DNA of 64,000 nucleotides from Macrostomum lignano (lineage: Eukaryota). The stretch spans positions 62,001-126,000 of the forward strand of contig NIVC01001167.1 of NCBI GenBank assembly GCA_002269645.1, read 5' to 3'. The translations under genes and the position numbers were made by a program. The notes under the pieces are model-generated. The model was not told the origin of the DNA, searched no databases, and was given only the letters and a program-made list of their open reading frames with translations. Of the stretch, positions 18,985-62,670 are shown one piece after another. The number at the start of each line of letters is the position of its first letter. Position 1 is the first letter of the stretch.

Positions 18985-21900
18985 ATGGATCCCAGCTTGT
19001 TTCAGCATCATCATCAATCGTCCATATTTTATCCGCACAGCTTCGACCCTCATCAGCAGCCCCCGATGCCCGCCTGTCACGCTCAGCAGCAATTTCCCAA
19101 TCAGCCTCATCATCAGCACCAGCAGCTCCAGCATCAGCAGCATCAGCCAGCCGGCAAGAAGCGCGGCCGTCTCGACCCCCGCCTCCGTCGCATCCATCAG
19201 CGCAAGGCGGCCAATCAGCGCGAGCGCAAGCGGATGCGCTCCATCAATGCCGCTTTTGAAGGCCTACGAAGGCGCCTGCCGGTGGAGCAGTCCGAGGACA
19301 GGAGGCTGTCCAAGGTGGAGACGCTCAAGCACGCCATCCAGTACATTCAAGGCCTCGCCGATCTGCTCAGCGCTTTGGAGGCCGACGAGGCCAGGACCAA
19401 CCCTGATGGCGTGGCCGCCAGGAGGAGGGCCAAGATTGTCCTGCTGTGCAGGACTGCCAATGATGAGGGGTCTTCGACGGCTTCGGCTGCTGCTGGCAGT
19501 GGCTGGCAAGGTGAGTTAATTGAGCTTGATTCTCATGGGTGAGATGGATCTCCCTCTCCGCTGTCTACCCTCTCCCTCTCCGCTGTCTACCCTCTCCCTC
19601 TCCGCTGTCTACCCTCTCCCTCTCCGCTGTCTACCCTCTCCTTCTCCGCTGTCTACCCTCTCCCTCTCCGCTGTCTACCCTCTCCTTCTCCGCTGTCTAC
19701 CCTCTCCTTCTCCGCTGTCTACCCTCTCCTTCTCCGCTGTCTACCCTCTCCTTCTCCGCTGTCTACCCTCTCCTTCTCCGCTGTCTACCCTCTCCCTCTC
19801 CGCTGTCTACCCTCTCCCTCTCCGCTGTCTACCCTCTCCCTCTCCGCTGTCTACCCTCTCCTTCTCCGCTGTCTACCCTCTCCTTCTCCGCTGTCTACCC
19901 TCTCCTTCTCCGCTGTCTACCCTCTCCTTCTCCGCTGTCTACCCTCTCCCTCTCCGCTGTCTACCCTCTCCCTCTCCGCTGTCTACCCTCTCCCTCTCCG
20001 CTGTCTACTCTCTCCTTCTCCGCTGTCTACCCTCTCCTTCTCCGCTGTCTACCCTCTACTTCTCCGCTGTCTACCATCTCCCTCTCCGCTGTCTTACCCT
20101 CTCCCTCTCCGCTGTTTACTCTCTCCCTCTCCGCTGTCTACCATCTCCCTCTCCGCTGTCTACTCTCTCCTTCTCCGCTGTCTACCCTCTCCCTCTCCGC
20201 TGTCTACTCTCTCCTTCTCCGCTGTCTACCCTCACCCTCTCCGCTGTCTACTCTCTCCTTCTCCGCTGTCTACCCTCACACTCTCCGCTGTCTACCCTTT
20301 ACTATAGAACCATCTCCAACATGTAGCAAAATGTTTAACTTATATTATTAATTGGGCCAAAAAGTCAATCAGCAAGCATTAATAATTCAAATAGAAAATA
20401 TAACTAAACAAAGATTGCATTTTTTTGGTGAGACTACTATGTAGCTCTATTATATGCGCCAATGTATAAATATATCGATATCTATACAGCTCTGCGATAT
20501 AACTGCATTAATAAATGATTGATCGAACCGAATAGAAGAATCGCCGCCTGCCTGCATGCAGCTCACTCGCTTTTATAGAATGCAAACACTTGATGTTGGA
20601 GGCTGCGGCTATAGCAGCAAAAGGCGCGGGAACTGCCAGCAGTATAAGAGGGAGAGACAGAAAAACGGCCCCTCGAGACATTGCGCAACCGTTCCTGCAG
20701 GCAGCTAGATTTTGAAACCCTCTTATACTTGTTAATCCTTATCACACTAAATCCTTTGTTGAGAAGTCCGCCCAGCAGCAGACTTAATGCGAATGATGTA
20801 ACTATGCACACACAGCAGCATATTCTGGGTTTGAGAATGACGGACACTTCAGTTGGGGAAATTATGAAATTGTTGCCAAGTTGCTGAGAGAAGGTGCTGA
20901 AGGATTGAAGGAGGCTGGGTCTGCTCAGTATGGAGCTGCTTGAGAAATCTCTCAAGGAAAAAGTGGGTCCGGGAGTTGCTTCGGGGTTTTTCACTCTTTC
21001 TGACCCGTTATGCTCTTCAGGAAAAGTCGCTGTTTCTTCAACGGTTGTTTCTTCAGGGGCTGCTTCTTCAGGGGCTGCTTCTTCAGGAGATGTTTCTTCA
21101 GGGGCTGCTTCTTCAGGAGATGTTTCTTCAGGGGCTTAGTTCTTCAGCGGCTGTTTCTTCAGGGGCTGCTTCTTCAGGGGCTGTTTCTTCAGGAGATGTT
21201 TCTTCAGGGGCTGTTTCTTCAGGAGATGTTTCTTCAGGGGCTGTTTCTTCAGGAGATGTTTCTTCAGGGGCTGTTTCTTCAGGAGATGTTTCTTCAGGGG
21301 CTGTTTCTTCAGGAGATGTTTCTTCAGGGGCTGCTTCTTCAGGAGATGTTTCTTCAGGGGCTGTTTCTTCAGGAGATGTTTCTTCAGGGGCTGTTTCTTC
21401 AGGAGATGTTTCTTCAGGGGCTATTTCTTCAGCGGCTGTTTCTTCAGCGGCTGTTTCTTCAGTGGCTTGGTTCTTCAGGGACTGTTTCTTCAGGGGCTGT
21501 TTCTTCAGGGGCTGTTTCTTCAGAAGATGTTTCTTCAGGGGCTATTTCTTCAGGGGCTGTTTCTTCAGCGGCTGTTTCTTCAGTGGCTTGGTTCTTCAGG
21601 GACTGTTTCTTCAGGGGCTGTTTCTTCAGGAGATGTTTCTTCAGGGGCTATTTCTTCAGGGGCTGCTTCTTCAGGAGATGTTTCTTCAGGGGCTGCTTCT
21701 TCAGGAGATGTTTCTTCAGGGGCTGTTTCTTCAGGAGATGTTTCTTCAGGGACTGTTTCTTCAGGGGCTGCTTCTTCAGGAGATGTTTCTTCAGGGGCTG
21801 TTTCTTCAGCGGCTGTTTCTTCAGGAGATGTTTCTTCAGGGGCTGCTTCTTCAGGAGATGTTTCTTCAGGGGCTGCTTCTTCAGGAGATGTTTCTTCAGG

Positions 21901-24900
21901 GGCTGTTTCTTCAGCGGCTGTTTCTTCAGGAGATGTTTCTTCAGGGGCTGCTTCTTCAGGAGATGTTTCTTCAGGGGCTATTTCTTCAGCGGCTGTTTCT
22001 TCAGGGGCTGTTTCTTCAGGGACTGTTTCTTCAGGGGCTGTTTCTTCAGGAGATGTTTCTTCAGGGGCTGTTTCTTCAGGAGATGTTTCTTCAGGGGCTG
22101 TTTCTTCAGGGGCTTAGTTCTTCAGCGGCTGTTTCTTCAGGGACTGTTTCTTCAGGGGCTGTTTCTTCAGGAGATGTTTCTTCAGGGGCTGCTTCTTCAG
22201 GGGCTGTTTCTTCAGGAGATGTTTCTTCAGGGGCTGCTTCTTCAGGGGCTGTTTCTTCAGGAGATGTTTCTTCAGGGGCTGCTTCTTCAGGGGCTGTTTC
22301 TTCAGGAGATGTTTCTTCAGGGGCTGCTTCTTCAGGGGCTGTTTCTTCAGGAGATGTTTCTTCAGGGGCTGTTTCTTCAGCGGCTGTTTCTTCAGTGGCT
22401 ATTTCTTCAGCGGCTGTTTCTTCAGTGGCTGTTTCTTCAGGGGCTGTTTCTTCAGGGGCTTGGTTCTTCAGGGGCTGTTTATTCAGGGGCTTGGTTCTTC
22501 AGGGGCTGTTTATTCAGAGGCTGTTTTTCAGGGGCTTGGTTCTTCAGGGGCTGTTTATTCAGGGGCTTGGTTCTTCAGAGGCTGTTTCTTCAGAGGTATA
22601 GCAATAGCGACAAAATCAAGGTGAAAAATAACAATGATCAAAATCATATGCTTGGAATGCGAACTTTCACTCACTATTAGTTCAATTCTCACTAATTTAA
22701 TTCTATAATAGCACACGTGGCCATGTCCGCCGCCCAGATCCCCCCGTTGTAGTCACCATGGTCAGGAACAGCCGCACACAGGCAAGAAATGCCTGTGTGC
22801 GTGACATGTTATAGACAATAAATCTTATCATTGATGTTGTGTGACTGTGGCTTTGGCCACTTCAGATCTTGTGGCTCTCATCCGTCTCGATTCTCCATCC
22901 ACATCCTTTTAATGTGAATTAAACAACCGACGCGTGTGCACCTCCGTATGCAACTGTGCTTTCCCCTGTCTGCTTGTGCGTGACTTGCTGGGGATGCGAT
23001 GCTGCATGGGAACTGTTAGGATTCGAGCTGAATTGTTTCAAACCATATCGAGTTTTTGTTACTGGCCAGTTTAGGATGTTCTGCTCTCTCTACTCTCCTA
23101 CCAACCCTGTCTACTATCCTATCTACTCTGTCTACTGTTCTGTTAGCTACCATATCTACTCTCTGTTATCTACCCTGTCTACTCTCTGTTAACTACCCTG
23201 TCTACTCTGTTATCTACCCTGTCTACTCTCTGTTATCTACCCTGTCTAATCTGTTATCTACCCTGTCTACTCTCTGTTAACTACCCTGTCTACTCTGTTA
23301 TCTACCCTGTGTCTTCTGTTATCTACCCTGTCTACTCTCTGTTATCTACCCTGTCTACTCTGTTATCTACTCTGTCTACTCTGCTATCTACTCTGTCTAC
23401 TCTCTGTAAACTACCCTGTCAACTCTGCTATCTACCCGGTCTACTCTCTGTTAACTACCCTGTCTACTCTGCTATCTATCCTGTCTACTCTCTGTTAACT
23501 ACCCTGTCTACTCTGTTATCTACCCTGTGTCTTCTGTTTTCTACCCTGTCTACTCTCTGTTAACTACCCTGTGTCTTCTGTTTTCTACCCTGTCTACTCT
23601 CTGTTATCTACCCTGTCTACTCTGTTGTCTACCCTGTCTACTCTGTTATCTACCCTGTCTACTCTGTTATCTACCCTGTCTACTCTGTTAACTACCCTGT
23701 CTACTCTGTTATCTACCCTGTCTACTCTGTTATCTACCCTGTCTACTCTGTTATCTACCATGTCTACTCTGTTATCTACCCTGTCTACTCTGTTATCTAC
23801 CCTGTCTACTCTGTTATCTACCCTGTCTACTCTGTTATCTACCCTGTCTACTCTGTTATCTACCCTGTCTACTCTGTTATCTACCCTGTCTACTCTGTTA
23901 TCTACCCTGTCTACTCTGTTATCTACCCTGTCTACTCTGTTATCTACCATGTCTACTCTGTTATCTACCCTGTCTACTCTGTTATCTACCCTGTCTACTC
24001 TGTTATCTACCCTGTCTACTCTGTTATCTACCCTGTCTACTCTGTTATCTACCCTGTCTACTCTGTTATCTACCCTGTCTACTCTGTTATCTACCCTGTC
24101 TACTCTGTTATCTACCCTGTCTACTCTGTTATCTACCCTGTCTACTCTGTTATCTACCCTGTCTACTCTGTTATCTACCATGTCTACTCTCTGCTATCTA
24201 CCCTTTCTGCCCTCTTATCTAACCTGCCCCCTACTTCTCATATCTACTTTATTTCCTATCAGAAGTCTGAGTTCTCATGCACTGATATTTTCTATACGTA
24301 ATAAAATCAACCAAAGTAAAATTCAGAATCAATCCAAATCTCACGAAAGCCGTTTATTGAAAGCTTAATAAAAAATTCACCATTATACTGAGGTATAGAT
24401 TTACTTGCTCTAACACTTCATCACCTTCACCAGTCTCCACTTGAAGCTTTGACAGGCCTATAATACACAATACAACAACTGAGAGCTGGACAAGCCACCG
24501 GCAAAGGTGCCAAGGAATTAACGGTCAAGATTAACTGGTTGAGCGCATAACGCACCCATACGCGTGGCCAGTCAAAATCGCTTTCACACTGTATGCTAAG
24601 AAAGTTTTACACAATGATCCGAAATTCTTTATAAAAGATGAAGAACCGCTTTACAAGGAATTCGACCATTAGGCCACGTGGCTACCATGCAGACCCGCCA
24701 TCCTTGATCTGCTTGGGAACTTTGCAGCAACTCAGCCCCCTTAACTCACCGATCCCTTCGAAATAAAACACGTGCTCCCTGCACACTTGCACACTTCAAT
24801 AGTGCGATAAAATATGCTTGTTAAAGGGAGGTCTTTGTCGCGAATTTCTATACAAGAAAGCTCAGGCGCATGTTCCTCGGCCAGATACGGCCCTTGCCGT

Positions 24901-27900
24901 TTAAAAAACTTCTTGCCTCCTTCAGTTTTATATTGACGAGTGATGAAAAAATGAACAAAGTACCATCGCAAGCAGATGGCTGCAAAACGTGCCTGACCAA
25001 GTGATCAATTGACTCTCGTGAGCACTGGGGAGCAATGGCTGCGCGTCACTCAACTAAGTGTCTGTCTTTCACTATTTTATACCACACAGAGTCACGTAAA
25101 TTGGCTCAAGGCTCAAGCATTCTTTGATAGAAATTCTTCTTTTAGCTTTTGATTCTCGCAAAATTTAAGGTTTTCAATAGCTCGTTATTAGTGGCAGTCT
25201 GGTATTTGAAGGGTAGAGAAGAGAAAAGTAAAGTAGGGTAGACAGAGTAGGGTAGAGAGAGATAGGTAGAGAGATAAAAAAGAGAGTAGGATAGAGAGAG
25301 TAAGACTAGAGAGTAGGCTAGAGAGTGTAGGCTACAGAGTAGGGTAGAGAGTTTTGGCTAGAGTAGGGTAGAGAGTAGGGTAGAGAGAGTAGGGTAGAGA
25401 GTAGGGTAGAGAGAGTAGGATAGAGAGAGTAGGGTAGAGAGTGTAGGCTACAGAGTAGGGTAGAGAGTGTAGGCTACAGAGTAGGGTAGAGAGTTTTGGC
25501 TAGAGTAGGGTAGAGAGTAGGGTAGAGAGAGTAGGGTAGAGAGTAGGGTAGAGAGAGTAGGATAGAGAGAGTAGGGTAGAGAGTGTAGGCTACAGAGTAG
25601 GGTAGAGAGTGTAGGCTACAGAGTAGGGTAGAGAGTGTAGGCTACAGAGTAGGGTAGAGAGTGTAGGCTACAGAGTAGGGTAGAGAGTGTAGGCTACAGA
25701 GTAGGGTAGAGAGAGATAGGTAGAGAGATAAAAAAGAGAGTAGGATAGAGAGAGTAAGACTAGAGAGTAGGCTAGAGAGTGTAGGCTACAGAGTAGGGTA
25801 GAGAGTTTTGGCTAGAGTAGGGTAGAGAGTAGGGTAGAGAGAGTAGGGTAGAGAGTAGGGTAGAGAGAGTAGGATAGAGAGAGTAGGGTAGAGAGTGTAG
25901 GCTACAGAGTAGGGTAGAGAGTGTAGGCTACAGAGTAGGGTAGAGAGTGTAGGCTACAGAGTAGGGTAGAGAGTGTAGGCTACAGAGTAGGGTAGAGAGT
26001 GTAGGCTACAGAGTAGGGTAGAGAGTGTAGGCTACAGAGTAGGGTAGAGAGTGTAGGCTACAGAGTAGGGTAGAGAGTGTAGGCTACAGAGTAGGGTAGA
26101 GAGTGTAGGCTACAGAGTAGGGTAGAGAGTGTAGGCTACAGAGTAGGGTAGAGAGAGTAGGGTAGAGAGAGTAAGGTAGAGAGAGTAGGGTAAAGAGAGT
26201 AGGGTAGAGAGAGTAGGGTAAAGAGAGTAAGGTAGAGAGAGAGAGAGTAGGGTAGAGAGAGTAGGGTAGACAGAGAGTAGGGTAGAGAGTGTAGGGTAAA
26301 GAGAGTAGGGTAGAGAGAGTAGGGTAGACAGAGAGTAGGGTAGAGAGTGTAGGGTAGAGAGAGTAGGGTAGAGAGAGTAGGGTAGACAGAGAGTAGGGTA
26401 GAGAGTGTAGGGTAGAGAGAGTAGGGTAAAGAGAGTAAGGTAGAGAGAGAGAGAGAGTAGGGTAGAGAGAGTAGGGTAGACAGAGAGTAGGGTAGAGAGT
26501 GTAGGGTAGAGAGAGTAGGGTAGAGAGAGTAGGGTAGACAGAGTGTAGGGTAGAGAGTGTAGGGTAGAGAGAGTAGGGTAAAGAGAGTAAGGTAGAGAGA
26601 GAGAGTAGGGTAGACAGAGAGTAGGGTAGAGAGTGTAGGGTAGAGAGAGTAGGGTAGAGAGAGTAGGGTAGACAGAGAGTAGGGTAGAGAGTGTAGGGTA
26701 GAGAGAGTAGGGTAGAGAGAGTAGGGTAAAGAGAGTAAGGTAGAGAGAGAGAGAGTAGGGTAGAGAGAGTAGGGTAGACAGAGAGTAGGGTAGAGAGTGT
26801 AGGGTAGACAGAGAGTAGGGTAGAGAGTGTAGGGTAGAGAGAGTAGGGTAGAGAGAGTAAGGTAGACAGAGAGTAGGGTAGAGAGTGTAGGGTAGAGAGA
26901 GTAGGGTAAAGAGAGTAAGGTAGAGAGAGAGAGTAGGGTAGACAGAGTAGGGTAGACAGAGAGTAGGGTAGAGAGTGTAGGGTAGAGAGAGTAGGGTAGA
27001 GAGAGTAGGGTAAAGAGAGTAAGGTAGAGAGAGAGAGAGTAGGGTAGAGAGAGTAGGGTAGACAGAGAGTAGGGTAGAGAGTGTAGGGTAGAGAGAGTAG
27101 GGTAGAGAGAGTAAGGTAGACAGAGAGTAGGGTAGAGAGTGTAGGGTAGAGAGAGTAGGGTAAAGAGAGTAAGGTAGAGAGAGAGAGTAGGGTAGACAGA
27201 GTAGGGTAGACAGAGAGTAGGGTAGAGAGTGTAGGGTAGAGAGAGTAGGGTAGAGAGAGTAGGGTAAAGAGAGTAAGGTAGAGAGAGAGAGAGTAGGGTA
27301 GAGAGAGTAGGGTAGACAGAGAGTAGGGTAGAGAGTGTAGGATAGAGAGAGTAGGGTAAAGAGAGTAAGGTAGAGAGAGAGAAAGTAGGGTAGAGAGAGT
27401 AGGGTAGACAGAGAGTAGGGTAGAGAGAGTAGGGTAGAGAGAGTAGGGTAGAGAGAGTAGGATAGAGAGAGTAGGATAGAGAGAGTAGGATAGAGAAAGT
27501 AGGGTAGAGAGAGTAGGATAGAGAGAGTAGGATAGAGAGAGTAGGATAGAGAGAGTAGGATAGAGAGAGTAGGGTAGAGAGAATAGGATAGAGAGAGTAG
27601 GGTAGAGAGAGTAGGATAGAGAGAGTAGGGTAGAGAGAGTAGGGTAAAGAGAGTAAGGTAGAGAGAGAGAGTAGGGTAGAGAGAGTAGGATAGAGAGAGT
27701 AGGGTAGAGAGAGTAGGGTAAAGAGAGTAAGGTAGAGAGAGAGTAGGGTAGAGAGAGTAGGGTAGAGAGAGTAGGATAGAGAGAGTAGGATAGAGAGAGT
27801 AGGATAGAGAGAGTAGGGTAGAGAGAGTAAGGTAGAGAGAGAGAGAGTAGGGTAGAGAGAGTAGGATAGAGAGTAGGGTAGAGAGAGTAGGATAGAGAGA

Positions 27901-28443
27901 GTAGGGTAGAGAGAGTAGGGTAAAGAGAGTAAGGTAGAGAGAGAGTAGGGTAGAGAGAGTAGGGTAGAGAGAGTAGGATAGAGAGAGTAGGATAGAGAGA
28001 GTAGGGTAGAGAGAGTAAGGTAGAGAGAGAGAGTAGGGTAGAGAGTAGGGTAGAGAGAGTAGGGCAGAGAGTAGGGAGAGAGTAGGGTAGAGAGCAAGGA
28101 ACTAAAAAACAAAAGTAATACTTGTGCATCTCTCACCATGCCTCCCCAAACGGTCGCCCCGGTTCCAGCGCCCCAGCAGGCCATCCCGGACCTCGCAGAC
28201 AGCTGCCTGCTGGATTCTGACGACTCTCTACAGATGATGGACGACGATCCGGAAGGCGAGCTCGGCGAAGTCTGGGGCCACTCACTGGCTTGGATAGACC
28301 AGAGAGGCGATTTCGAACGGCTCATCCGCTGTCCGAACGGCCCGGAAGATCCGACGGAGGCTAGCAGGTCGCGGGTTCGAGCCCGGATTTGGCGACCAAC
28401 CCAAACGGCCACGGGAATGTGGTTCGGCGGAGGGGACGTTTGA
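18985..28443 (+). CDS. PTF1A: PTF1a/Fer1-type bHLH transcription factor, ~266 aa; exons 18985-19510 and 28169-28443 (alternative acceptor at 28199 possible)
   Basis: bHLH QRKAANQRERKRMRSINAAFEGLR...RLSKVETL; linker KIVLLCR resembles vertebrate KVIICHR; exon 2 has GHSLAW (C1, vertebrate GHSLSW) and RARIWRP (C2, vertebrate RTAKVWTP). Phase-1 donor CAAG|GTGAGT matches acceptor ccggttccag|. Confidence 0.88.
19548..20297. repeat. 22-bp pyrimidine-rich minisatellite (ctctccctctccgctgtctacc), PTF1a intron
   Basis: About 34 units starting about 35 nt after the donor. Confidence 0.95.
20563..22647 (-). pseudogene. Possible decayed type-I membrane/mucin-like gene: signal-like start, (EETAP/EETSP)n stalk, hydrophobic segment and tail
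   Basis: The minus frame of the 15-bp repeat reads EETAP and runs in frame into ORF 20563-20994 containing ICCCVCIVTSFALSLLLGGLL-NK. ATG at 22647 begins MILIIVIFHLDFVAIA. Disrupted by 16-nt units and gaa-taa variants. Confidence 0.35.
21040..22595. repeat. 15-bp minisatellite (ttcttcaggggctgt/ttcttcaggagatgt) with occasional 16-bp units
   Basis: About 100 units. Confidence 0.95.
23085..24215. repeat. 21-bp minisatellite (ctaccctgtctactctgttat), PTF1a intron
   Basis: Tandem units, most homogeneous in 23600-24180. Confidence 0.95.
25232..28092. repeat. Purine-rich 14/26-bp satellite (gagagtagggtaga; gagtgtaggctacagagtagggtaga), PTF1a intron
   Basis: About 2.9 kb of tandem units with higher-order blocks. 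Confidence 0.95.
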
Positions 28444-28949
28444 AGGTCATTCTTCAAGCAATATCGTCATCTTGTCTGGCGAGTTTGTCTTCAGCCGCTT
28501 AAAGATATTTTATTTGTGCATAAAAGTTGTTTCAACAGTTTAACAATGAGAGTTTTGCTCTATAAATTAAAGCAATTGTGTAGTTTTTTAATCCTCTAGG
28601 AGGCTGAGTGCATGCTAATGAGCTTGTTTATAATGAGCTATATAAATATAATTATCTTTAAATATACAGCAGCAACTACCATAACTTCTACTGTATATTT
28701 GCAGTCTCCTATGTCTCCTATCGTCAGGTGTACATGCCTGTCGATATTAGACAGTCGGGGGCGCCGTACACCCTGTGTGAGCGTGTGTACTAATTAGCTG
28801 TGAGGCGTGATCTCTGCGCGCGTGTGTGCTCAGCTCAGACACCTCAGGATGGCGGCTAAGACTTAGGAGATCCCATTTTTGGTCTAATATTAGTTTTCTT
28901 CATTTCATCCTACTTTTACCACCCTGAATAACCCTCTTCTATCATCTGT

Positions 28950-30185: not shown

Positions 30186-30647
30186 GTTTTTTTAGATAAA
30201 ATAATTAAGTCAAAAATACTTTGACGTATGTGATAATTATCAATGAAGTAGTTTAGTAAATTCGTCACAGATATTTACAAACTCCAATATTCCATAATTA
30301 TTAACAAGACACACTGCCGTATCAGTGGTACACACAGGAAACTAATTAACTAGAACTGATTTCTTCTGACCAGACAGACTTAACAAAAAACAGCGAAATC
30401 TGCTTTTATCAATGTTGTTTTTTTATTTACAATTTTTCCTTAGTGAGGCCAGGCGAGGTGAGGTGAGGTGGCTACACACAGACATATGGAAATAAAATCC
30501 GTATGATTTGCATTCGAAAAGTACATGCAAGGCTTCTTAATTTAGCAAAAAAAGAAATTAAATTGTTCAAAAGTAAAGCCTTCTGCCCGTCCTTCGAATT
30601 TTGTTTGTTCACATTTCTATCGAAATTCGTAAATCCAGATATCGAAC

Positions 30648-31560
30648 ACCAAGATCCTGAACTGGAATCCCAAGATCCTGAACTAGAATCCCAAGATCCT
30701 GAACTGGAATCCCAAGATCCTGAACTGGAATCCCAAGATACTGAACTGGAATCCCAAGATCCTAAACTAGAATCCCAAGATCCTGAACTAGAATCCCAAG
30801 ATCCTGAACTAGAATCCCAAGATCCTGAACTTTAAATCCCAAGATCCTGAACTGGAATCCCAAGATCCTGAACTTAAATCCCAAGATCCTGAACTGTAAT
30901 CCCAAGATCCTGAACTGGAATCCCAAGATCCTGAACTGGAATCCCAAGATCCTGAACTGGAATCCCAAGATCCTGAACTGGAATCCCAAGATCCTGAACT
31001 GGAATCCCAAGATCCTAAACTGGAATCCCAAGATCCTGAACTGGAATCCCAAGATCCTAAACTGGAATCCCAAGATCCTGAACTGGAATCCCAAGATCCT
31101 GAACTGGAATCCCAAGATCCTGAACTTAAATCCCAAGATCCTGAACTGGAATCCCAAGATCCTGAACTGGAATCCCAAGATCCTGAACTGGAATCCCAAG
31201 ATCCTGAACTGGAATCCCAAGATCCTGAACTGGAATCCCAAGATCCTAAACTGGAATCCCAAGATCCTGAACTGGAATCCCAAGATCCTGAACTGGAATC
31301 CCAAGATCCTGAACTGGAATCCCAAGATCCTGAACTAGAACCCCAAGATCCCAATTTCGAACCCCAAGATCCCGAATTAGAACCCCAAGATCCCGATTTC
31401 GAATCCCAAGATCCCGATTTCGAATCCCAAGATCTCGAATTAGAACCCCCAAGATCCCGAATTAAACCCCAAGATCCCGAATTAAACTTCAAGATCCCGA
31501 ATTAGAACCAAAAGATCCCGAATTAGAACCCCAAGATCCCAAATTAGAACCCCAAGATCT
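30648..31560. repeat. 21-bp minisatellite (ccaagatcctgaactggaatc)
   Basis: About 43 units, some of 20 nt. Confidence 0.95.
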
Positions 31561-32113: not shown

Positions 32114-35100
32114 TCACAGGCCCCAATTGAAGCCGCCAGGGCGCTCTTCTTCTGGAAGAGGCTGATAATTGGGATCTTGCTGGCCTGGGGGCGCGTCGAA
32201 CAGCGTTTTGCTGTGGGAGACCAGGGTGGGCAAAAGTGAATTTTTTGCTTACCGACTTAACTGAGGAGTGTGACCCATGCTGTCACCGTGACTGTGACCC
32301 ATGCTGTCACCGTGACTGTGACCCATGCTGTCACCGTGACTGTGACCCATGCTGTCACCGTGACTGTGACCCATGCTGTCACCGTGACTGTGACCCATGC
32401 TGTCACCGTGACTGTGACCCATGCTGTCACCGTGACTGTGACCCATGCTGTCACCGTGACTGTGACCCATGCTGTCACCGTGACTGTGACCCATGCTGTC
32501 ACCGTGACTGTGACCCATGCTGTCACCGTGACTGTGACCCATGCTGTCACCGTGACTGTGACCCATGCTGTCACCGTGACTGTGACCCATGCTGTCACCG
32601 TGACTGTGACCCATGCTGTCACCGTGACTGTGACCCATGCTGTCACCGTGACTGTGACCCATGCTGTCACCGTGACTGTGACCCATGCTGTCACCGTGAC
32701 TGTGACCCATGCTGTCACCGTGACTGTGACCCATGCTGTAACTGTGACCCATGGTGTCACCGTGACCGTGACCCATGCTGTAACTGTGACCCATGCTGTA
32801 ACTGTGGTTGTGACCCATGCTGTAACTGTGACCCATGCTGTCACCGTGACTGTGACCCATGCTGTAACTGTGGCTGTGACCCATGCTGTCACCGTGACTG
32901 TGACCCATGCTGTAACTGTGGCTGTGACCCATGCTGTAACTGTGACCCATGCTGTCACCGTGACTGTGACCCATGCTGTCACCGTGACCCATGCTGTAAC
33001 TGTGACCCATGCTGTAACTGTGACCCATGCTGTAACTGTGGCTGTGACCCATGCTGTAACTGTGACTGTGACCCATGCTGTAACTGTGGCCCATGCTGTA
33101 ACTGTGGCTGTGACCCATGCTGTAACTGTGACTGTGACCCATGCTGTAACTGTGACCCATGCTGTAACTGTGACCCATGCTGTAACTGTGGCTGTGACCC
33201 ATGCTGTAACTGTGACCCATGCTGTAACTGTGACTGTGACCCATGCTGTAACTGTGGCTGTGACCCATGCTGTAACTGTGACCCATGCTGTAACTGTGGC
33301 TGTGACCCATGCTGTAACTGTGACCCATGCTGTAACTGTGGCTGTGACCCATGCTGTAACTGTGACCCATGCTGTAACTGTGGCTGTGACCCATGCTGTA
33401 ACTGTGGCTGTGACCCATGCTGTCACTGTGACTCGGACCGAGTATTTACTAATCATTAAGGGCAGTGACTCACAGGAATTGAGGAGTCCGCAGCACGCGA
33501 AAGCCGTTACGCTGTCTTGGGAAAACATCTTCAAGAAAATAATACACGTGACCTGCTGCGATGCCTGCAATAATAATAAGAAACATATTGATTTGCTGCT
33601 GTGTGATCTATTAATTTAGGATTGGGATCTATAGGTTTTAGTATTAGGATCTACAGATTTTAGTATTGTGGTCTATAGACTAATGATTAGTATCTATAGC
33701 ATACATGCGCAACCTCTGAAATTCGGTCGGCCATGCGACTTAGTTTTAACAAAAATGCGACGTAGTTTTTGGCCAAAAAATGCGACTTACATGTAAAAAA
33801 ACCCTAAAGCAAAATTAACGCAACTTTGGGTAAACGGCAGGAGTAACTATGACTGTCTTATTAAGCCAATATGCCTCGTCAGCTACTTAGTACTACTACT
33901 TGATTATTTTTTCGGGTGGGCATTTTTGCGACTTCCTTGGTTGGCCGCCAAATCGGTCGGCCGGATCGGCCGACTCGGCCGACTGTTGCGCATGTATGAT
34001 CTATAGATTGAGGATTACGATCTATAGATTTAGGATTAGGATCTATAGATTTAGGATTAGGATCTATAGATTTAGGATTAGGATCTATAGATTTAGGATT
34101 AGGATCTATAGATTTATGATTGCGATCTGTAGATTTAGTATCTGGGTATCTGTAGATTTTAGTATTGGGATCTATAGATTAATAAATACGAGTTTCTAGT
34201 GAATAAAACTTGTGGGAAAAGGTCTAAATTATGACAGACTCACCCATAGCGTCAACAATAATAACGTTTCCCAGTAGGAACGAAAAAGCCATCAGCACCC
34301 AAGGCAAGTAGGGAGCTTGAAAAGTGAGCAAACCAAAGAAATTCATCCTGATGAATGGATTCCTTCGACTCCAAACGTAGACAATCATGATTGTGAAAGC
34401 CTGGCTAAGGAATACCATATTCACGAATAGGCCTGCGAGCTGAAATTAAAAAAAGGAAATGATAAAACGGCCCTTTTCAGTTCTGCTACTTGCTATACAC
34501 AATTAAAATTAAGAGAAAATAACATAACAATCTAAACCTATGACTATTGAACACAAACGTAAAACAAATATTGAATTTCGCAATTTAATAAATATTGCTG
34601 CTATCTAGTCTAGGGTGTTAATAAAATATTTTCGTAAAACGACCCTTTTAAGGGCCACCACTACTTATCTACAAATTTTAATGAAATCAACTAATATTGA
34701 TAATCGAGACGCAGAGTCGACTTATTAAAAACACTTTTACAATAATGTTTACAAAAACGGCTCTTTTTAGGGCCGCTGCACTCAGATGATCACTCACCGT
34801 CATGAAGCAACCGCCAAAGATGAACATGAGCGCAAAATCGCTGGTTCGGCCTCGGAACGAGTTTTCTTCAAGCATGCGACAGTACCGATAATTGAACACC
34901 ATATTAAAGAAGAAATTGAATCCAAATGTGCCAAAGAAGCAGAAGTTTGTAATTAAACGCCAAAGCTGAAAATTTACGGAAGACAAGATTTAGGCATTAA
35001 AAACTTTCAAAACAATCAACCAATATGAGATAATTTAAAATGATAAAATACGACTTACCTGTAGGTTCTTGAATATCAATGTTGGATGGAAGTACAGTTG

Positions 35101-38100
35101 AAATGGACTGACAATGTCCAATTGCTAAAAAAATGCGAAGAAAAGTACATTTATAAAGAAATCAATTCAAAAAAGATTTTAATCTACAATTATATTATGT
35201 CTATATAAATTTCAATTCATTAATAACATTCTTTAAAGCATGTTGAACAACTTAAATCATTAAGAATTTTTTGATAGCAATTTTAAAAACTATTCAATTT
35301 TATATCAATGCTGCCACATCAATATTATTCATAATCTACGAGGGGTGTCCAAAAAGTAGTCATACTTTTAACTGTAGCTCTCGTTCTATAGCTTCCTGTG
35401 ATTTAAAATTTTATGAACTGATAGCAGCAAATCTCTTCTACAGACTGCTTTTTGAATTTTTTAAATTGATACCAGAGAACAAAAGTTATACCCACAAAAG
35501 TAACAGTACCTGTATCACAGAGTTACACAAATTATAGGCTGAGCTTCACGAGATCCATGCCGAGTAAGCTTCAATGAACTGTTGATTTCGGCTTGTCCAA
35601 CCTGTCAGCAATCTCTCTAATGGTCATTCGGGAGTCCTCGTCAAGAAGATTCAGAATGGAGTCCGTCAGTACATCAGGTCGATGAATGTATGGCCGCCCC
35701 GTCCGATGCTGATCTGCCAAGTCAATCCTTCCCTTGCTGAACTGCTCCATCCATCGATAAACTGTCATTTTGCTGACCACAGAGGATCCATGCGCAGAGC
35801 AAAGTTTTGCGTGAATTTCTGAGGCACCATGGCCAGCGCCCCAAAGAGTGAAGATAGTACTTTGCTGAGCAACAACTGAGTGCACATCCATGTGTGTTGT
35901 CGAGTATGGGCAATGAAATCAATTGCAAAATGCAAGCTCCTCTGTTTGCAAGTAAAGTAATGAATTTAATGCTTTATTTTTCTGCGCATGATTCTGTCCA
36001 TAGACAAATTTCAGTCAGTCACAGTGAGCATAATTTTGCAATTGGGCTTTGGTATTGCTTAAACAAGACATTTATCGATGCCTTCTTAATGAGTGAGTGC
36101 AGAAGTCGACTATCATAAATTTTGATATAGTTTGTGTAACTCTATGGTACAGGTACTGTTACTTTTGTGGGTATAACTTTTGTTCTCTGGTATCAATTTT
36201 AAAAATTCAAAAAGCAGTCTGTAGAAGAGATTTGCCACTATCAGTTCATAAAATTTTAAATCACAGGAAGCTATAGAAGGAGAGCTATGGTTAAAAGTAT
36301 CACTACATTTTGGACACCCCTCGTACCATTCCAGATTGCAGACTACAAAATTTGAGGGCCACATTGACCGATGACTATACTCTACAATTGTTAGAGCACC
36401 AAGAGGCCGTTCTCCCTACGTCAACCAAGATTAACCAAGACCCACTAAAACACTAGTTATGGCAAGCTTGTTTTACAAAAACCCACCATTCTGGGTAGTT
36501 CAAGGCACAGAAACTAACAATAGACAATGCTATACAATATCTGTAAGGAGAATTGCGAACCGTCACCAGCACCTACACAGCAATTGGCGAAAGTGTTGGT
36601 GAACTTATCATCCCACAACACACGACACACAAAACCTCAGCTGCTACAGGCGGAACTATTTAAGGGCCCATTTGATAACAAGGAGGCTGCATCTCGCACT
36701 ATGCAGTGTTGTCAATTACCAGACGAAACTTATTGCATTGACTTGGATTGCAATAGTTGCAGCGTGCTGCACCAAAAGATGGCCATTATCGAGGAGCAGA
36801 TGGACAGGCTCAAAAATGAGCTTCAAAGTGCCAAAGTGGCAACGTCTGAAAGGCACGACTTGCTACTGAAGGAGGTGGATGTGCACAAGTCAATGCAGAG
36901 GCGCTTGGAGGTGGCTAATGCTGAGATAGATGACCTGCACCAAGAAATTGGTCATCTCAGAACAACTGGCGAATCATCCAAATTTCAATCCAATGTTATT
37001 CGAATTATGCAAGACTTTGCCACTCAAAGCCTTGCAACAAGCCAAATCCCAGCTTCTTCTTCTTCTTTTTCAAGGCACCTCCGTGTGCGGACTGGCCAAT
37101 CTGGAGGGGGCAGTGGCCCCATGCTGCGAATGAGCTTTGGTAGCTCCTGCTATTTACGCTTCCCCATCGACCGAGGTCATATCCAAGATTCTGGGAAAAG
37201 ACCAATGAATGCCGCTTCTGGTGTCCGCCCCAAACGTGACTATTACAAGAGAGCAGAAGGCAGCTATTGAGCATGCGGTTGCTGAACTCCGTTGCAAGCC
37301 AGGTGACAAGCAGTTGCGAAAGCTCACTAGACTCCTCATTTGTTCCCTTTTTTCGACCTCGGAATTGTGTGTGACTACCGTGTCTGGCATGGCCAAGAAG
37401 CAGCAAATTTGTATGCCAGCAAATTGTCATATTGTGAGGACAATTACTCAGTTCCTCACAGCTGCTTCTCCTAATCCTCTACCAGATGGTCTTTTCTGCA
37501 ATTCATTCAAATATTGCTCATTGGATGCCCTCCAAAAAAAGAAAAGGATCAATTCTAGTACGCTAAGAAGTGGCAGGACCGATCAATCCTCTTCAACTGA
37601 CAAGATGAGTGTGCTAAGTGGTGGCGGGACCAATCAGTCTTCCTCAACCGAGACGAGTGCGCTAAGAAGCAGTGGGACTGATCAGTCCTCCTCAACCGAG
37701 ACGAGTGCGCTAAGAAGCGGCGGGACTGATCAGTCCTCCTCAACTGAGACAAGTGTGCTAAGAAGCGGCAGGACTGATCAGTCCTCCTCAACTGACGAGA
37801 CGAATGCAATAAGTGGCGGCAGGACAATAAAAAAGGGAGAAGCAAACAAAGCAGCAACCTTTTCAGAGCTCAAAGAGATCAAAGAGAAATGTTTGCAAAA
37901 CCTAGACAGTTTTTTTTGTAATATTCCCCCAGTTTGTATACTCGTATGCTGCTGCTAATAAGCATTACGGCTATTTGTTTTCAACTAATTGCAACTGTGT
38001 CAAACATGTGCCAGGATTAGTATATGGGAATCAAAATATTTTTTTTAATTGTTAAATGAATTGCTGTTCCATTGTTGAAACTGTTTAAATTCAACTAGAT

Positions 38101-43851: not shown

Positions 43852-52153
<8,302 letters not shown>

Positions 52154-55008: not shown

Positions 55009-55760
55009 TACATGGCTTCATTTGGCCTTTGCCGTCATTATAGAGAAGCGAGAGAACAGGAGGAGCTCAAGGCTAAAGTTTACCTTAACCTGTTTCACAG
55101 ATTTTCTGGCTGTTAAGAGAGAGGAAGAGAGAGAGCCATTTTGGGTCCCAGGAGCCAGGAATGACGCGGATCCGACTTTAAGATTTAAGAATGCATACAA
55201 AAATAGTTGCATCCAGGGTTCAAAATCCATTTGTGTTGGTACTTGTAGTGTATAGTAGATTTTGCTGCCTTAGAAAACTTATTTATATAATTAGCATTGG
55301 CATTGGCACTGATAAGAGGGTGAACAGTAATTATAATAACGCCTTGATAATGGTCATTACTTTTGACTTCAATTAGGCCTTATAGGTCAGGTCGTAAAAT
55401 AATTTTTACATCCACTTGTGCGGGACTCACAATTTAACTAACACCTGCATTTCAGGTAAAAATAGGGGCCATAAAATACTTGGGACACTATTTTTATACT
55501 TTTTAGTTTTTACGAATATATAGAGGTGAAGAGTCCTAAAGCAAACTACGGGCATAATATTATTATTACAATGCTTACTAATTAATGGCTGAATGATGAT
55601 TCAAACCAAGGAGAGACCACATGAGGCAGAAGGTGGAGTGGCCAACTTCTAAAATTTTTGTTTTGACAGGCACAGGCAGAACCTTTTTATTTTCTCACTA
55701 TACTATATAGTATGAAACTTAATAAAGTAGCACTATTATACTAAGTCTAAAAGCATTGGT

Positions 55761-56820
55761 AGCGTTGGGAATCGTCGAGAATCGTTGAGAATCGTTGGGA
55801 ATCGTCGAGAATCGTTGAGAATCGTTGGGAATCGTTGGGAATCGTTGGGAATCGTTGAGAATCGTTGAGAATCGTTGGGAATCGTTGAGAATCGTTGGGA
55901 ATCGTTGGGAATCGTTGGGAATCGTTGGGAATCGTTGGGAATCGTTGGGAATCGTTGGGAATCGTTGGGAATCGTTGGGAATCGTTGAGAATCGTTGAGA
56001 ATCGTTGGGAATCGTTGAGAATCGTTGGGAATCGTTGGGAATCGTTGGGAATCGTTGGGAATCGTTGGGAATCGTTGAGAATCGTTGAGAATCGTTGATA
56101 ATCGTTGATAATCGTTGGGAATCATTGGGTATCATTGGAATCGTTGAGAATCGCTGAGAATCGTTGGAATCGTTGAGAATCGTTGAGAATCGTTGGAATC
56201 GTTGAGAATCGTTGAGAATTGTTGGGAATCGTTGGGAATCGTTGGGAATCGTTGAGAATCGTTGAGAATCGTTGGAATCGTTGGGAATCGTTGAGAATCG
56301 CTGAGAATCGTTGATAATCGTTGGAATCGTTGAGAATCGTTGAGAATCGCTGAGAATCGTTGATAATCGTTGGAATCGTTGAGAATCGTTGAGAATCGTT
56401 GGGAATCGTTGGGGATCGTTGGGAATCGTTGGGAATCGTTGAGAAGCGTTGAGAATCGTTGGGAATCATTGGGAATCGTTGAGAATCGTTGAGAATCGCT
56501 GAGAATCGTTGGAATCGTTGAGAATCGTTGAGAATCGTTGGGAATCATTGGGTATCATTGGAATCGTTGAGAATCGCTGAGAATCGTTGGAATCGTTGAG
56601 AATCGTTGAGAATCGTTGGAATCGTTGAGAATCGTTGAGAATCGTTGAGAATCGTTGAGAATCGTTGAGAATCGTTGGGAATCGTTGGGGATCGTTGGGA
56701 ATCGTTGGGAATCGTTGAGAAGCGTTGAGAATCGTTGGGAATCATTGGGAATCGTTGAGAATCGTTGAGAATCGTTGGGAATCATTGGGTATCATTGGAA
56801 TCGTTGGGAATCGTTGGGAA
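55761..56820. repeat. 10-bp satellite (gaatcgttgg/gaatcgttga) with higher-order blocks
   Basis: About 105 units; marker gaatcattgggtatcattgg recurs at about 56120, 56543 and 56780. Confidence 0.95.
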
Positions 56821-60331: not shown

Positions 60332-60364
<33 letters not shown>

Positions 60365-60645
60365 GCCTGCCTGTCTGCCTGTCTGTCTGCCTGCCTGTCT
60401 GTCTGCCTGCCTGCCTGTCTGTCTGTCTGTCTGTCTGCCTGCCTGTCTGTCTGCCTGTCTTTCTGTCTGCCTGTCTGTCTGTCTATCTGTCTGCCTGTCT
60501 ATCTGGCTGTCTGTCTGTCTGCCTGTCTGTCTGTCTGCCTGCCTGTCTGTCTGTCTGTCTGTCTGTCTGTCTGCCTGCCTGCCTGTCTGCCTGTCTGTCT
60601 GCCTGCCTGCCTGTCTGCCTGTCTTTCTGTCTGCCTGTCTGTCTG

Positions 60646-60682
<37 letters not shown>

Positions 60683-61411
60683 GTCTGCCTGTCTATCTGT
60701 CTGTCTGTCTGCCTGCCTGCCTGTCTGCCTGCCTGTCTGTCTGCCTGTCTGTCTGCCTGTCTGTCTGTCTGTCTGCCTGTCTGCCTGTCTGCCTGCCTGT
60801 CTGTGTCTGTCTGTCTGTCTGCCTGTCTGTCTGTCTGCCTGCCTGCCTGTCTGCCTGCCTGTCTGTGTCTGTCTGTCTGCCTGCCTGCCTGTCTGTCTGT
60901 CTGCCTGTCTGCCTGTCTGTCTGCCTGTCTGTCTGTCTGTCTGTCTGTCTGTCTGCCTGTCTGTCTGTCTGCCTGCCTGCCTGCCTGTCTGTCTGTCTGT
61001 CTGTCTGTCTGCCTGCCTGCCTGTCTGTCTGTCTGCCTGTCTGCCTGTCTGTCTGCCTGTCTGTCTGTCTGTCTGTCTGTCTGCCTGTCTATCTGGCTGT
61101 CTGTCTGTCTGCCTGTCTGTCTGTCTGCCTGTCTGTCTGTCTACCTGTCTGCCTGCCTGTCTGCCTGCCTGTCTGCCTGCCTGTCTGTGTCTGTCTGTCT
61201 GTCTGCCTGTCTGTCTGTCTGCCTGCCTGCCTGTCTGCCTGCCTGTCTGTGTCTGTCTGTCTGCCTGCCTGCCTGTCTGTCTGTCTGCCTGTCTGCCTGT
61301 CTGTCTGCCTGTCTGTCTGTCTGCCTGCCTGCCTGTCTGCCTGCCTGTCTGTGTCTGTCTGTCTGCCTGCCTGCCTGTCTGTCTGTCTGCCTGTCTGCCT
61401 GTCTGTCTGCC

Positions 61412-61445
<34 letters not shown>

Positions 61446-61921
61446 CCTGTCTGCCTGCCTGTCTGTCTGCCTGCCTGTCTGTCTGCCTGTCTGTCTGCCT
61501 GCCTGTCTGTCTGCCTGCCTGCCTGCCTGCCTGTCTGTCCGTCTGTCTGTCTGCCTGTCTGTCTGTCTATCTGTCTGCCTGTCTGTCTGTCTGCCTGTCT
61601 GTCTGTCTACCTGTCTGCCTGCCTGTCTGCCTGCCTGTCTGTCTGCCTGTCTGTCTGTCTGTCTGTCTGTCTGCCTGCCTGTCTGTCTGCCTGCCTGCCT
61701 GTCTGTCTGTCTGTCTGTCTGCCTGCCTGCCTGTCTGCCTGTCTTTCTGTCTGCCTGCCTGTCTGTCTATCTGTCTGCCTGTCTATCTGGCTGTCTGTCT
61801 GTCTGCCTGTCTGTCTGTCTGCCTGCCTGCCTGCCTGTCTGTCTGTCTGTCTGTCTGTCTGCCTGCCTGCCTGTCTGCCTGTCTGTCTGCCTGCCTGTCT
61901 GCCTGTCTGCCTGTCTGTCTG

Positions 61922-61954
<33 letters not shown>

Positions 61955-61973
61955 GTCTGTCTGTCTATCTGGC

Positions 61974-62014
<41 letters not shown>

Positions 62015-62350
62015 GTCTGTCTGTCTGTGTCTGTCTGCCTGTCTGTCTGCCTGCCTGTCTGCCTGCCTGTCTGTCTGCCTGTCTGTCTGCCTGTCTGTCT
62101 GTCTGTCTGCCTGTCTGTCTGCCTGTCTGTCTGTCTGTCTGCCTGTCTGCCTGTCTGCCTGCCTGTCCGCCTGCCTGTCTGTGTCTGTCTGTCTGTCTGC
62201 CTGCCTGCCTGTCTGCCTGCCTGTCTGTGTCTGTCTGTCTGTCTGCCTGTCTGTCTGTCTGTCTGTCTGCCTGCCTGTCTGTCTGTCTGCCTGCCTGTCT
62301 GTCTGTCTGTCTGCCTGTCTGTCTGCCTGTCTGTCTGCCTGTCTGTCTGC

Positions 62351-62381
<31 letters not shown>

Positions 62382-62633
62382 CCTGTCTGCCTGCCTGTCT
62401 GTCTGCCTGCCTGTCTGTCTGTCTGCCTGTCTGTCTGCCTGCCTGTCTGTCTGCCTGCCTGCCTGTCTGTCTGTCTGCCTGTCTGTCTGCCTGCCTGTCT
62501 GTCTGCCTGCCTGTCTGTCTGCCTGTCTTTCTGTCTGCCTGTCTGTCTGCCTGCCTGTCTGTCTGCCTGCCTGCCTGTCTGTCTGTCTGTCTGTCTGTCT
62601 GTCTGCCTGCCTGCCTGTCTGCCTGCCTGTCTG

Positions 62634-62670
<37 letters not shown>

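What the first reader, a model, noticed from the sequence alone, without database searches (positions are those of the whole stretch)
33700..33998. hAT-type MITE carrying the 28S rRNA R2/Pokey/I-PpoI target sequence, altered at the cut site
Seen: 299-bp element with perfect 14-bp TIRs and 8-bp TSD, inserted in a minisatellite in Derlin intron 4, with a 64-bp 28S-like segment at 33828-33891. Established: this is the conserved rDNA site CTCTCTTAAGGTAGC used by R2 retrotransposons, Pokey and I-PpoI. Differences concentrate at the cleavage point (TTAAGGTAGCC becomes TTATTAAGCC). Inference: a DNA transposon captured the rDNA hotspot, possibly as a repair or excision scar. It may be spreading decoy or landing sites for rDNA-specific elements, or rRNA-matching small-RNA templates. 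I know of no described hAT MITE family of this kind.
Basis: partly seen in the sequence, partly recalled or inferred. Interest (0 to 1): 0.85.

Follow-up and report, generated by a model that had tools for sequence, protein, structure and literature searches.

The report
Flatworm MITE carrying a 28S fragment
A small, recently mobile cut-and-paste transposon in an intron of a flatworm (Macrostomum lignano) Derlin gene carries an ~80-bp piece copied from the 28S rRNA gene. The piece is most likely a passenger picked up once by the family's ancestor, which makes it a tidy but fairly ordinary case of a transposon capturing host DNA.

Summary
Window 33700-33998 is a 299-bp element with perfect 14-bp terminal inverted repeats and an 8-bp target-site duplication. 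The window is Macrostomum lignano contig NIVC01001167.1. Two paralogous Derlin loci in the same assembly have the empty site with one copy of the 8 bp, so this is a clean, recent insertion.

A second, 263-bp copy lies elsewhere in one paralog. It has identical termini and its own 8-bp duplication. It carries the same 28S-like segment with the same central change, so the fragment belongs to the family.

Against authentic eukaryotic 28S, window 33812-33891 aligns at about 80-86% identity (E about 1e-12 to 1e-13). It covers the whole 60-bp R2 substrate and the I-PpoI and Pokey site, but the cut-site core is destroyed.

- hAT is plausible from the 8-bp duplication, but the termini are atypical and no transposase partner could be found.
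- Nothing supports a scar, decoy, landing-site or small-RNA role. The segment is no better conserved between copies than the rest of the element, and neither copy is occupied.

The best reading is a passenger fragment captured once during formation of the non-autonomous element. Genome-wide copy number and Repbase/Dfam status could not be tested.

The parts
33692..33699 (.). Left copy of the 8-bp target-site duplication (ATCTATAG)
   Evidence: The paralogous empty sites in L002 and L003 have a single copy.
33700..33998 (+). Whole non-autonomous element (MITE), 299 bp, with no coding capacity
   Evidence: It is absent from both paralogous loci.
33700..33713 (+). Left terminal inverted repeat, CATACATGCGCAAC
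   Evidence: The second copy in L003 has the identical terminus.
33733..33801 (+). Three subterminal direct repeats of about 22-25 bp (ATGCGACNTAGTTTT...). They may be transposase-binding motifs, which is an inference.
   Evidence: repeat family D4.
33812..33891 (+). 28S rRNA-derived segment (core 33828-33891), in the sense orientation of 28S on the + strand and so antisense to Derlin transcription. It corresponds to LSU_rRNA_eukarya model positions of about 2230-2310 and covers the 60-bp R2 substrate.
   Evidence: the R2 substrate is printed in PMC13000458.
33860..33866 (+). Disrupted core: ATTAAGC stands where 28S has AAGGTAGC (the R2 nick TTAAGG^TAGCC and the I-PpoI centre). The L003 copy has the same change.
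33950..33984 (+). Right subterminal G+C-rich repeats (CGGTCGGCC, GGATCGGCC, GACTCGGCC), partly palindromic
   Evidence: repeats D5 and I4. They are partly deleted in the L003 copy.
33985..33998 (-). Right terminal inverted repeat, GTTGCGCATGTATG
33999..34006 (.). Right copy of the 8-bp target-site duplication (ATCTATAG)
33615..34180 (.). Host 21-22-bp minisatellite (33615-33679 and 33998-34180) into which the element inserted
33473..34439 (-). Derlin coding exon 4 (about 34439-34240), intron 4 and coding exon 5 (about 33589-33473). The gene is BOX15_Mlig028359g1, protein P0001.

Best explanation
This is one copy of a non-autonomous cut-and-paste DNA transposon family (a MITE) of Macrostomum lignano. 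Its 14-bp terminal inverted repeats and subterminal short repeats would be recognised by a transposase supplied in trans. That transposase is probably of the hAT superfamily, because integration duplicates 8 bp.

The copy in the window inserted recently into a minisatellite in Derlin intron 4, after this locus diverged from its 99%-identical paralog.

The family's internal region contains about 80 bp, possibly up to about 100 bp, copied from the 28S rRNA gene around the R2, Pokey and I-PpoI site. I read this as passenger (filler) DNA acquired once, in the ancestor of the family, when the short element was formed. The most likely route is template switching during repair of an excision gap (abortive gap repair). 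The alternative route is mobilisation of DNA lying between two neighbouring insertions.

The scrambled AAGGTAG core was already present in that ancestor. It is most simply one complex mutation or a junction artefact. The segment now decays like the rest of the element and has no demonstrated function.

Shown: the element anatomy, the insertion, the existence of a family, the homology to 28S, the shared change, and the lack of extra conservation. Inferred: the superfamily, the capture mechanism and the absence of function.
For: - Anatomy and insertion. The empty sites in L002 and L003 carry a single CTATAGAT.
- Recency: the flanks are 99.6-99.7% identical to L002, and both the terminal repeats and the duplication are perfect.
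- Family: a second copy lies at L003 11545-11807. It is 93% identical, has identical 17-bp termini and has its own duplication, GCCAGAGG.
- 28S homology: E about 1e-12 to 1e-13 against loci verified as full-length LSU_rRNA_eukarya. Rfam's only significant family is LSU. In 116 kb of M. lignano DNA, the only rDNA-like pieces are the two MITE copies.
- Ancestral change: both copies have the same TGTCTTATTAAG.
- No extra constraint: 4/80 substitutions in the segment versus 13/183 elsewhere, p = 0.6. The covariance-model alignment shows many broken rRNA base pairs.
- Capture during gap repair is an established route: template switching during SDSA may capture sequence from other loci (PMC3814204, citing Rubin and Levy 1997). 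Pack-hAT elements carrying host DNA are documented (PMC8903248).
- No coding capacity: all six reading frames contain stop codons.
Against: - Only two copies could be examined, so subfamilies without the fragment cannot be excluded.
- The genome's own 28S and rDNA spacers were not available. The source of the fragment and of the rest of the internal region is therefore unverified.
- The differences from 28S are somewhat clustered at the endonuclease site (p about 0.04), which a pure-passenger view leaves to chance.
- The termini do not fit the common hAT motif, and no autonomous partner was found, so the superfamily is uncertain.
- No microhomology or junction signature of template switching could be identified.
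Confidence: 0.72

Rival explanations
1. Scar and decoy reading. The captured 28S copy had been cut at the R2, I-PpoI or Pokey site and misrepaired. Alternatively, only a cut-resistant variant could spread. The MITE would now disperse uncleavable target mimics that bind or distract rDNA-specific elements, or offer them landing sites.
For: - The segment spans the entire 60-bp R2 substrate.
- The upstream 33 bp differ from 28S at only 2 positions, and the overall spacing is preserved. MAFFT aligns the 64-bp core without gaps.
- The worst-hit block is exactly AAGGTAG.
- The clustering is weakly non-random, p = 0.037.
- The change is ancestral to both copies.
Against: - The test was chosen after seeing the data. 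One complex mutation gives the same pattern, and the chance that it lands within a few bp of the site in an 80-bp fragment is about 10% (my estimate).
- There is ascertainment bias: this is the most conserved and most recognisable stretch of 28S.
- Neither copy carries an R2, Pokey or intron insertion.
- Conservation of the segment between copies is not elevated.
- The I-PpoI 15-mer keeps only 8 of 15 bases and the nick site is lost, so the landing-site idea is disfavoured.
- The searched literature has no evidence that R2 or a homing endonuclease exists in this species.
Confidence: 0.07
2. Functional RNA reading. Transcribed copies, which lie in introns antisense to the host gene and so give antisense-28S RNA, would act as templates for rRNA-matching small RNAs or as sponges for factors that recognise helix 69 of 28S.
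For: - Both copies lie in Derlin introns with the 28S-sense strand opposite to the gene.
- The element folds better than shuffled sequence as single-stranded DNA (z = -4.15).
Against: - The sample is two copies.
- The fold is driven by the terminal repeats and the G+C-rich palindromes, not by a long hairpin.
- The longest exact match to 28S is about 15 nt.
- The rRNA base pairs are broken.
- There is no Rfam snoRNA or miRNA hit of note.
- The segment shows no extra conservation.
Confidence: 0.04
3. Same element, different superfamily. It may not be a hAT but a member of another superfamily that makes 8-bp duplications (P, Merlin, Sola3, Zisupton, or an atypical Mutator).
For: - The termini begin CATAC rather than the common hAT YARNG, and are more reminiscent of P-type CATG termini (my own knowledge).
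- One duplication (GCCAGAGG) is G+C-rich.
- Only 1 of 2 duplications fits the hAT pattern nTnnnnAn.
Against: - hAT is by far the commonest source of 8-bp-duplication MITEs in animals.
- Short terminal repeats plus subterminal short repeats are typical of hAT.
- hAT termini vary widely.
Confidence: 0.22
4. Chance resemblance or assembly artefact. On this reading the 28S-like stretch is coincidental, or the insertion is a misassembly.
For: - The Rfam gathering search finds nothing.
- The 701-bp E-value search missed the LSU match.
Against: - E is about 1e-13 against authentic 28S.
- LSU is the only significant Rfam family in the narrow search.
- A second independent copy has its own duplication.
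- The empty sites are exact.
Confidence: 0.01

Closest known systems
hAT-superfamily MITEs (for example Mar in Drosophila willistoni, PMC3517528; BniHAT in Brassica, PMC7385995)
   Same: - Short non-coding element.
- Short terminal inverted repeats with subterminal short repeats.
- 8-bp target-site duplication.
- Insertion in genic and intronic DNA.
- Insertion polymorphism.
   Different: - The termini do not fit the usual YARNG motif.
- No autonomous hAT partner has been identified.
- It carries a recognisable host rRNA-gene fragment.
Pack-TYPE or transduplicating DNA transposons (Pack-MULE, Pack-CACTA, Pack-hAT; PMC8903248) and filler capture by abortive gap repair (Rubin and Levy 1997, via PMC3814204)
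   Same: A non-autonomous terminal-inverted-repeat element with host DNA between the transposon ends, which is then amplified by transposition.
   Different: - The captured DNA is about 80 bp of a non-coding rRNA gene, not exons.
- The host is an animal (a flatworm), whereas these elements have been studied mainly in plants.
- The capture mechanism was not demonstrated here.
Transposable elements with rDNA-derived sequence: Pokey and mPok (piggyBac, with IGS-derived repeats; PMC3849761), SINE28 (28S-derived SINE), 5S-derived SINEs and the Cassandra and Ajax TRIMs (review PMC10946416, Table 2)
   Same: A mobile element carries a piece of the rDNA unit. In Pokey's case the element is also linked to this same 28S site.
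   Different: - Those cases involve IGS repeats, 5S promoters or a retroposed 28S 3' part, often with a plausible role in transcription or concerted evolution.
- Here a cut-and-paste MITE carries the helix-69 region with a destroyed target core.
- The review's table lists no such case.
The 28S target site of R2 retrotransposons, Pokey and the I-PpoI-type homing endonucleases
   Same: The segment is homologous to the complete 60-bp R2 substrate and to the 22-bp I-PpoI/I-Vdi141I target.
   Different: - The core is TTATTAAGCC instead of TTAAGGTAGCC.
- Only 8 of 15 I-PpoI positions are kept.
- The site is unoccupied in both copies.
- It is not in an rRNA gene.

Membership tests
MITE (non-autonomous TIR DNA transposon) | Terminal inverted repeats | tested here: met
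   The repeats are 14 of 14 bp complementary, and they are identical in the second copy.
MITE (non-autonomous TIR DNA transposon) | Target-site duplication, with an empty site elsewhere | tested here: met
   There are two independent 8-bp duplications. Two paralogs have exact empty sites.
MITE (non-autonomous TIR DNA transposon) | Small size and no coding capacity | tested here: met
   The copies are 299 and 263 bp. All six reading frames contain stops. The frame translations have no protein relatives.
MITE (non-autonomous TIR DNA transposon) | A multi-copy, homogeneous family | tested here: inconclusive
   Two copies were found in 116 kb of available M. lignano DNA, 93% identical to each other. 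The genome-wide count could not be obtained.
hAT superfamily | 8-bp target-site duplication | tested here: met
   The duplications are ATCTATAG and GCCAGAGG.
hAT superfamily | Typical terminal motif YARNG (common but not universal; from my own knowledge) | tested here: not met
   The termini read CATAC....
hAT superfamily | Target preference nTnnnnAn (Ac-like) or nnnTAnnn (Buster-like) (from my own knowledge) | tested here: inconclusive
   ATCTATAG fits both patterns. GCCAGAGG fits neither. The sample is two.
hAT superfamily | An autonomous partner with the same termini that encodes a hAT transposase (BED finger, RNase-H-like DDE, hAT dimerisation domain) | not testable with these tools
   Ten of the window's longer ORFs gave no hAT domain, and the terminal-repeat pattern occurs only at the MITE.
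Eukaryotic LSU (28S) rRNA, Rfam RF02543, as a derived fragment | Significant similarity to authentic 28S | tested here: met
   E is 1e-12 to 1e-13 against Rfam-verified 28S loci. The covariance-model hit has E 0.0094 at model positions 2209-2310.
Eukaryotic LSU (28S) rRNA, Rfam RF02543, as a derived fragment | Reaches the family gathering score and keeps the rRNA structure (that is, is an rRNA gene) | tested here: not met
   The score is 18.2 bits against a gathering score of 50, and many pairs are non-canonical. It is a decayed fragment, not a gene.
Functional R2 / I-PpoI / Pokey target site | Intact recognition core (CTCTCTTAAGGTAGC; nick at TTAAGG^TAGCC) | tested here: not met
   The element has CTGTCTTATTAAGCC, matching 8 of 15 positions when aligned without gaps. 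A TTAA is still present.
Functional R2 / I-PpoI / Pokey target site | Occupied by an rDNA-specific element in some copies | tested here: not met
   Neither of the two copies is interrupted. The sample is very small.
Pack-TYPE or transduplicating transposon | Host-gene-derived DNA between the transposon ends, shared by family members | tested here: met
   Both copies carry the 28S-derived segment in the same position and orientation.

The most novel reading that the evidence does not exclude
The MITE family disperses through the genome a 28S R2-target mimic. Its protein-binding flanks are largely intact but its cleavage core is disabled. Either only a cut-resistant variant could spread in a genome with an active rDNA-specific endonuclease, or the copies now act as decoys that titrate R2-type ribonucleoproteins.
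Probability: 0.05. Interest if true: 0.7.

Novelty: new member of a known kind. Interest (0 to 1): 0.3.

Why it matters
The locus gives a clean, datable example of recent DNA-transposon activity in the regeneration model Macrostomum lignano. The filled site can be compared with empty sites in near-identical paralogs. It is also an example of an animal MITE that has captured and amplified a host rRNA-gene fragment, a category not listed in the 2024 review of rDNA-derived transposable-element sequences.

There are two practical consequences:
- Dispersed 28S-like pieces of this family will be annotated as LSU-rRNA fragments, and they can mislead rDNA mapping, FISH probe design or R2-site searches in this genome.
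- The terminal repeats point to a recently active transposase that could interest those developing transgenesis tools for this species.

If the decoy reading were right, it would be a new kind of interaction between a DNA transposon and rDNA-specific retroelements. Nothing found here supports that reading.

Tried and rejected
1. Other copies via spurious ORFs. I concatenated all stop-free frame translations of the element and searched 5.8 billion proteins. Nothing was found.
2. Exact-pattern scans for the family-specific core GGCAGGAGTAACTATGACTGTCTTATTAAG in metagenome contigs and viral contigs. There were no matches.
3. More M. lignano DNA, all unsuccessful:
   - The mariner-type HTH ORF used as a protein query found nothing.
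   - Ten window ORFs are not in the protein collection.
   - Five splice models of the neighbouring HIPK-like kinase (829 or 828 aa) are not in the collection.
   - As a result, only the window plus two paralogous 26-kb loci could be surveyed.
4. nhmmer with the two-copy alignment produced no output. I relied on blastn instead, which found no further copies.
5. Rfam at gathering threshold, and an E-value search over 701 bp, missed the LSU match. Only the 121-bp search recovered it.
6. Literature on M. lignano transposons. No description of hAT MITEs or of R2 in this species was found.
7. I rejected the idea that the 8-bp duplication is just the minisatellite repeat.
8. I rejected a one-off capture in this copy alone.
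9. I rejected a snoRNA-like guide on the antisense strand. There is no box D next to the complementary stretch and no Rfam hit.
10. I looked for a larger element around the L003 copy. There is none: no ORFs and no other inverted repeats.
Full report
**Source and context.** The Derlin exons of the window encode exactly protein PAA71365.1 (BOX15_Mlig028359g1) of the flatworm Macrostomum lignano. The contig fetched for that protein (NIVC01001167.1 of GCA_002269645.1) is 100% identical to window 22114-49195. The Derlin gene lies on the minus strand. The surrounding intron is full of minisatellites, and the element interrupts a 21-22-bp array.

**The element is real.** Window 33700-33998 begins with CATACATGCGCAAC and ends with its exact reverse complement. 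These are the only two matches in the 64 kb, even allowing 2 mismatches. ATCTATAG flanks both ends. That octamer is part of the minisatellite unit, so I looked for an independent test.

- The same assembly holds two paralogous Derlin loci, L002 on NIVC01000038.1 and L003 on NIVC01000349.1.
- Both read ...CCTCAAT CTATAGAT ACTAATC... in gene orientation, with one copy of the octamer and no element.
- Their flanks are 99.6-99.7% (L002) and 97-99% (L003) identical to the window.

This proves a precise 299-bp insertion with an 8-bp duplication, made after the window locus and L002 diverged. The element has stops in all six frames.

**It belongs to a family, and the 28S piece is a family feature.** L003 11545-11807 holds a second copy in a different intron position.

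- It is 263 bp long and 93% identical over 225 aligned bp.
- It has identical 17-bp termini and its own 8-bp duplication, GCCAGAGG.
- It has two short deletions in the subterminal regions.
- It carries the same 28S-like segment in the same place and orientation, with the same TGTCTTATTAAG core.

No further copy exists in the 116 kb of M. lignano DNA I could reach.

**The 28S homology is significant.** A metagenome scan for the canonical 28S string returned 120 rDNA loci. Rfam confirms three of them as full-length LSU_rRNA_eukarya.

- Against these, default blastn aligns window 33828-33891 at 86% over 65 columns, E 1.8e-12.
- Looser scoring aligns 33812-33891 at 80-81% over 81 columns, E about 1e-13 in a 616-kb database.
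- No other part of the element, and no other part of the three M. lignano loci, resembles rDNA.
- Rfam misses the fragment at gathering threshold and in a 701-bp E-value search. A 121-bp search returns LSU_rRNA_eukarya as the only significant family, with 18.2 bits, E 0.0094 and model positions 2209-2310.

The segment covers the complete 60-bp R2 substrate printed in PMC13000458. The cleaved-strand oligonucleotides there place the nick at TTAAGG^TAGCC. It also covers the I-PpoI/I-Vdi141I target CTGACTCTCTTAAGGTAGCCAA from PMC2602781. Pokey uses one specific TTAA in the 28S gene, and the sequence preferences around its insertions match that 28S site (PMC3849761).

**How it differs from 28S.** In the 64-bp core:

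- The upstream 33 bp have 2 substitutions.
- The block AAGGTAG is scrambled to ATTAAG. This can be written as a 1-bp deletion plus GGT>TTA, followed 7 bp later by a 1-bp insertion, or as other equivalent gapped forms.
- The downstream 20 bp have 2-3 substitutions.
- Aligned without gaps, only 8 of the 15 I-PpoI positions survive.

The clustering is weakly non-random. The chance of at least 4 of 9 difference columns falling within 5 columns is 0.037. It is a post hoc test, however, and a single complex mutation would do the same.

There is also ascertainment bias. This is the most conserved and best-known stretch of 28S, so a fragment from anywhere else would not have been recognised by eye.

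**No sign of function.**

- Between the two copies, the 28S-like segment has 4 substitutions in 80 bp against 13 in 183 bp elsewhere (Fisher p = 0.6).
- The covariance-model alignment shows many broken rRNA pairs.
- Neither copy is interrupted by another element.
- The element folds better than shuffled sequence (z = -4.15). That fold comes from the terminal repeats and the G+C-rich subterminal palindromes, not from a long hairpin.
- Both copies place the 28S-sense strand antisense to Derlin, but that is a sample of two.

**Mechanism.** The simplest account is that the fragment is filler. It would have been acquired when the short element arose from a longer parent. Template switching during repair of an excision gap is an accepted route to internally deleted elements carrying foreign sequence (PMC3814204, citing Rubin and Levy 1997). 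An alternative is mobilisation of the DNA between two neighbouring insertions, which PMC8903248 appears to propose for Pack-TYPE elements; this is my reading of a truncated section title together with the local-insertion data shown. rDNA is an abundant potential donor. Neither route could be shown here, because the junctions carry no clear signature. This step is inference.

**Superfamily.** An 8-bp duplication, short terminal repeats and subterminal short repeats point first to hAT. Against that, the termini (CATAC...) do not match the common YARNG, only one of the two duplications fits the hAT target patterns, and several rarer superfamilies also make 8-bp duplications. No hAT domain was found among ten of the window's longer ORFs. 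I file the element as 'hAT-like, superfamily unconfirmed'.

**Comparison with what is known.** The 2024 review of rDNA and transposable elements lists the known rDNA-derived sequences in mobile elements. They are Pokey's IGS repeats, the 5S-derived SINEs and TRIMs, and SINE28. It lists no cut-and-paste MITE with this 28S region. I found no description of M. lignano hAT MITEs, or of R2 in this species. Repbase and Dfam could not be queried.

The finding is therefore a new member of a known kind, namely non-autonomous DNA transposons that capture and amplify host DNA. It is not a new kind of system.

**Limits.** All attempts to obtain more M. lignano sequence or more copies failed. The following remain open: copy number, the consensus, the existence of subfamilies without the fragment, the autonomous partner, and comparison with the species' own rDNA.

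**Verdict.** Interest is modest (0.3). The decoy or scar reading is not excluded but has roughly a 5% chance.

Noticed in passing
window 35342-36321: This is a 980-bp insertion that is absent from paralog L002, where the flanks are contiguous at 12866|12867. It has 200-nt inverted repeats (35337-35536 and 36126-36325, 95% complementary). Inside is an ORF (35574-35918, minus strand) with mariner-type HTH domains (HTH_32, HTH_48) but no catalytic domain. It is a second recent DNA-transposon insertion in the same Derlin gene. The protein search with this ORF found nothing.
   Followed up: partly
window 33700-33998 versus L003 11545-11807: Seven of the 17 substitutions between the two MITE copies are CpG to TpG or CpA, with the window copy keeping the CpG. 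The L003 copy also lacks the CGGTCGGCC motif at both ends. This suggests that the L003 copy is older and that CpG sites in this genome mutate faster.
   Followed up: partly
window 43852-50105 (+): This is a HIPK-like protein kinase gene next to Derlin. Its kinase-domain exons are at about 43852-44679, 45590-45904 and 47869-48288. A canonical GT-AG splice model gives 829 aa, but the annotation reports 828 aa. None of the five models I tried is in the protein collection.
   Followed up: partly
L003 10221-13525, compared with L001 and L002: About 3.3 kb of the early Derlin intron of paralog L003 shares no megablast similarity with the other two paralogs, although the exons and the downstream introns are 88-97% identical. 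The intron content has turned over rapidly between paralogs.
   Followed up: no
window 26084-28457, 30500-31500, 32500-33433, 48650-49110, 55700-56550, 57870-58500, 59800-62800: The window has an unusually dense set of long minisatellite arrays, for example a 24/42/66-bp unit at 32500-33433. These create long artefactual ORFs in several frames.
   Followed up: no
window 7988-8566 (-), 21010-22680 (+): One ORF matches Antistasin-family repeats (7988-8566). Another matches Pentapeptide repeats (21010-22680), which is probably an artefact of a tandem repeat.
   Followed up: no
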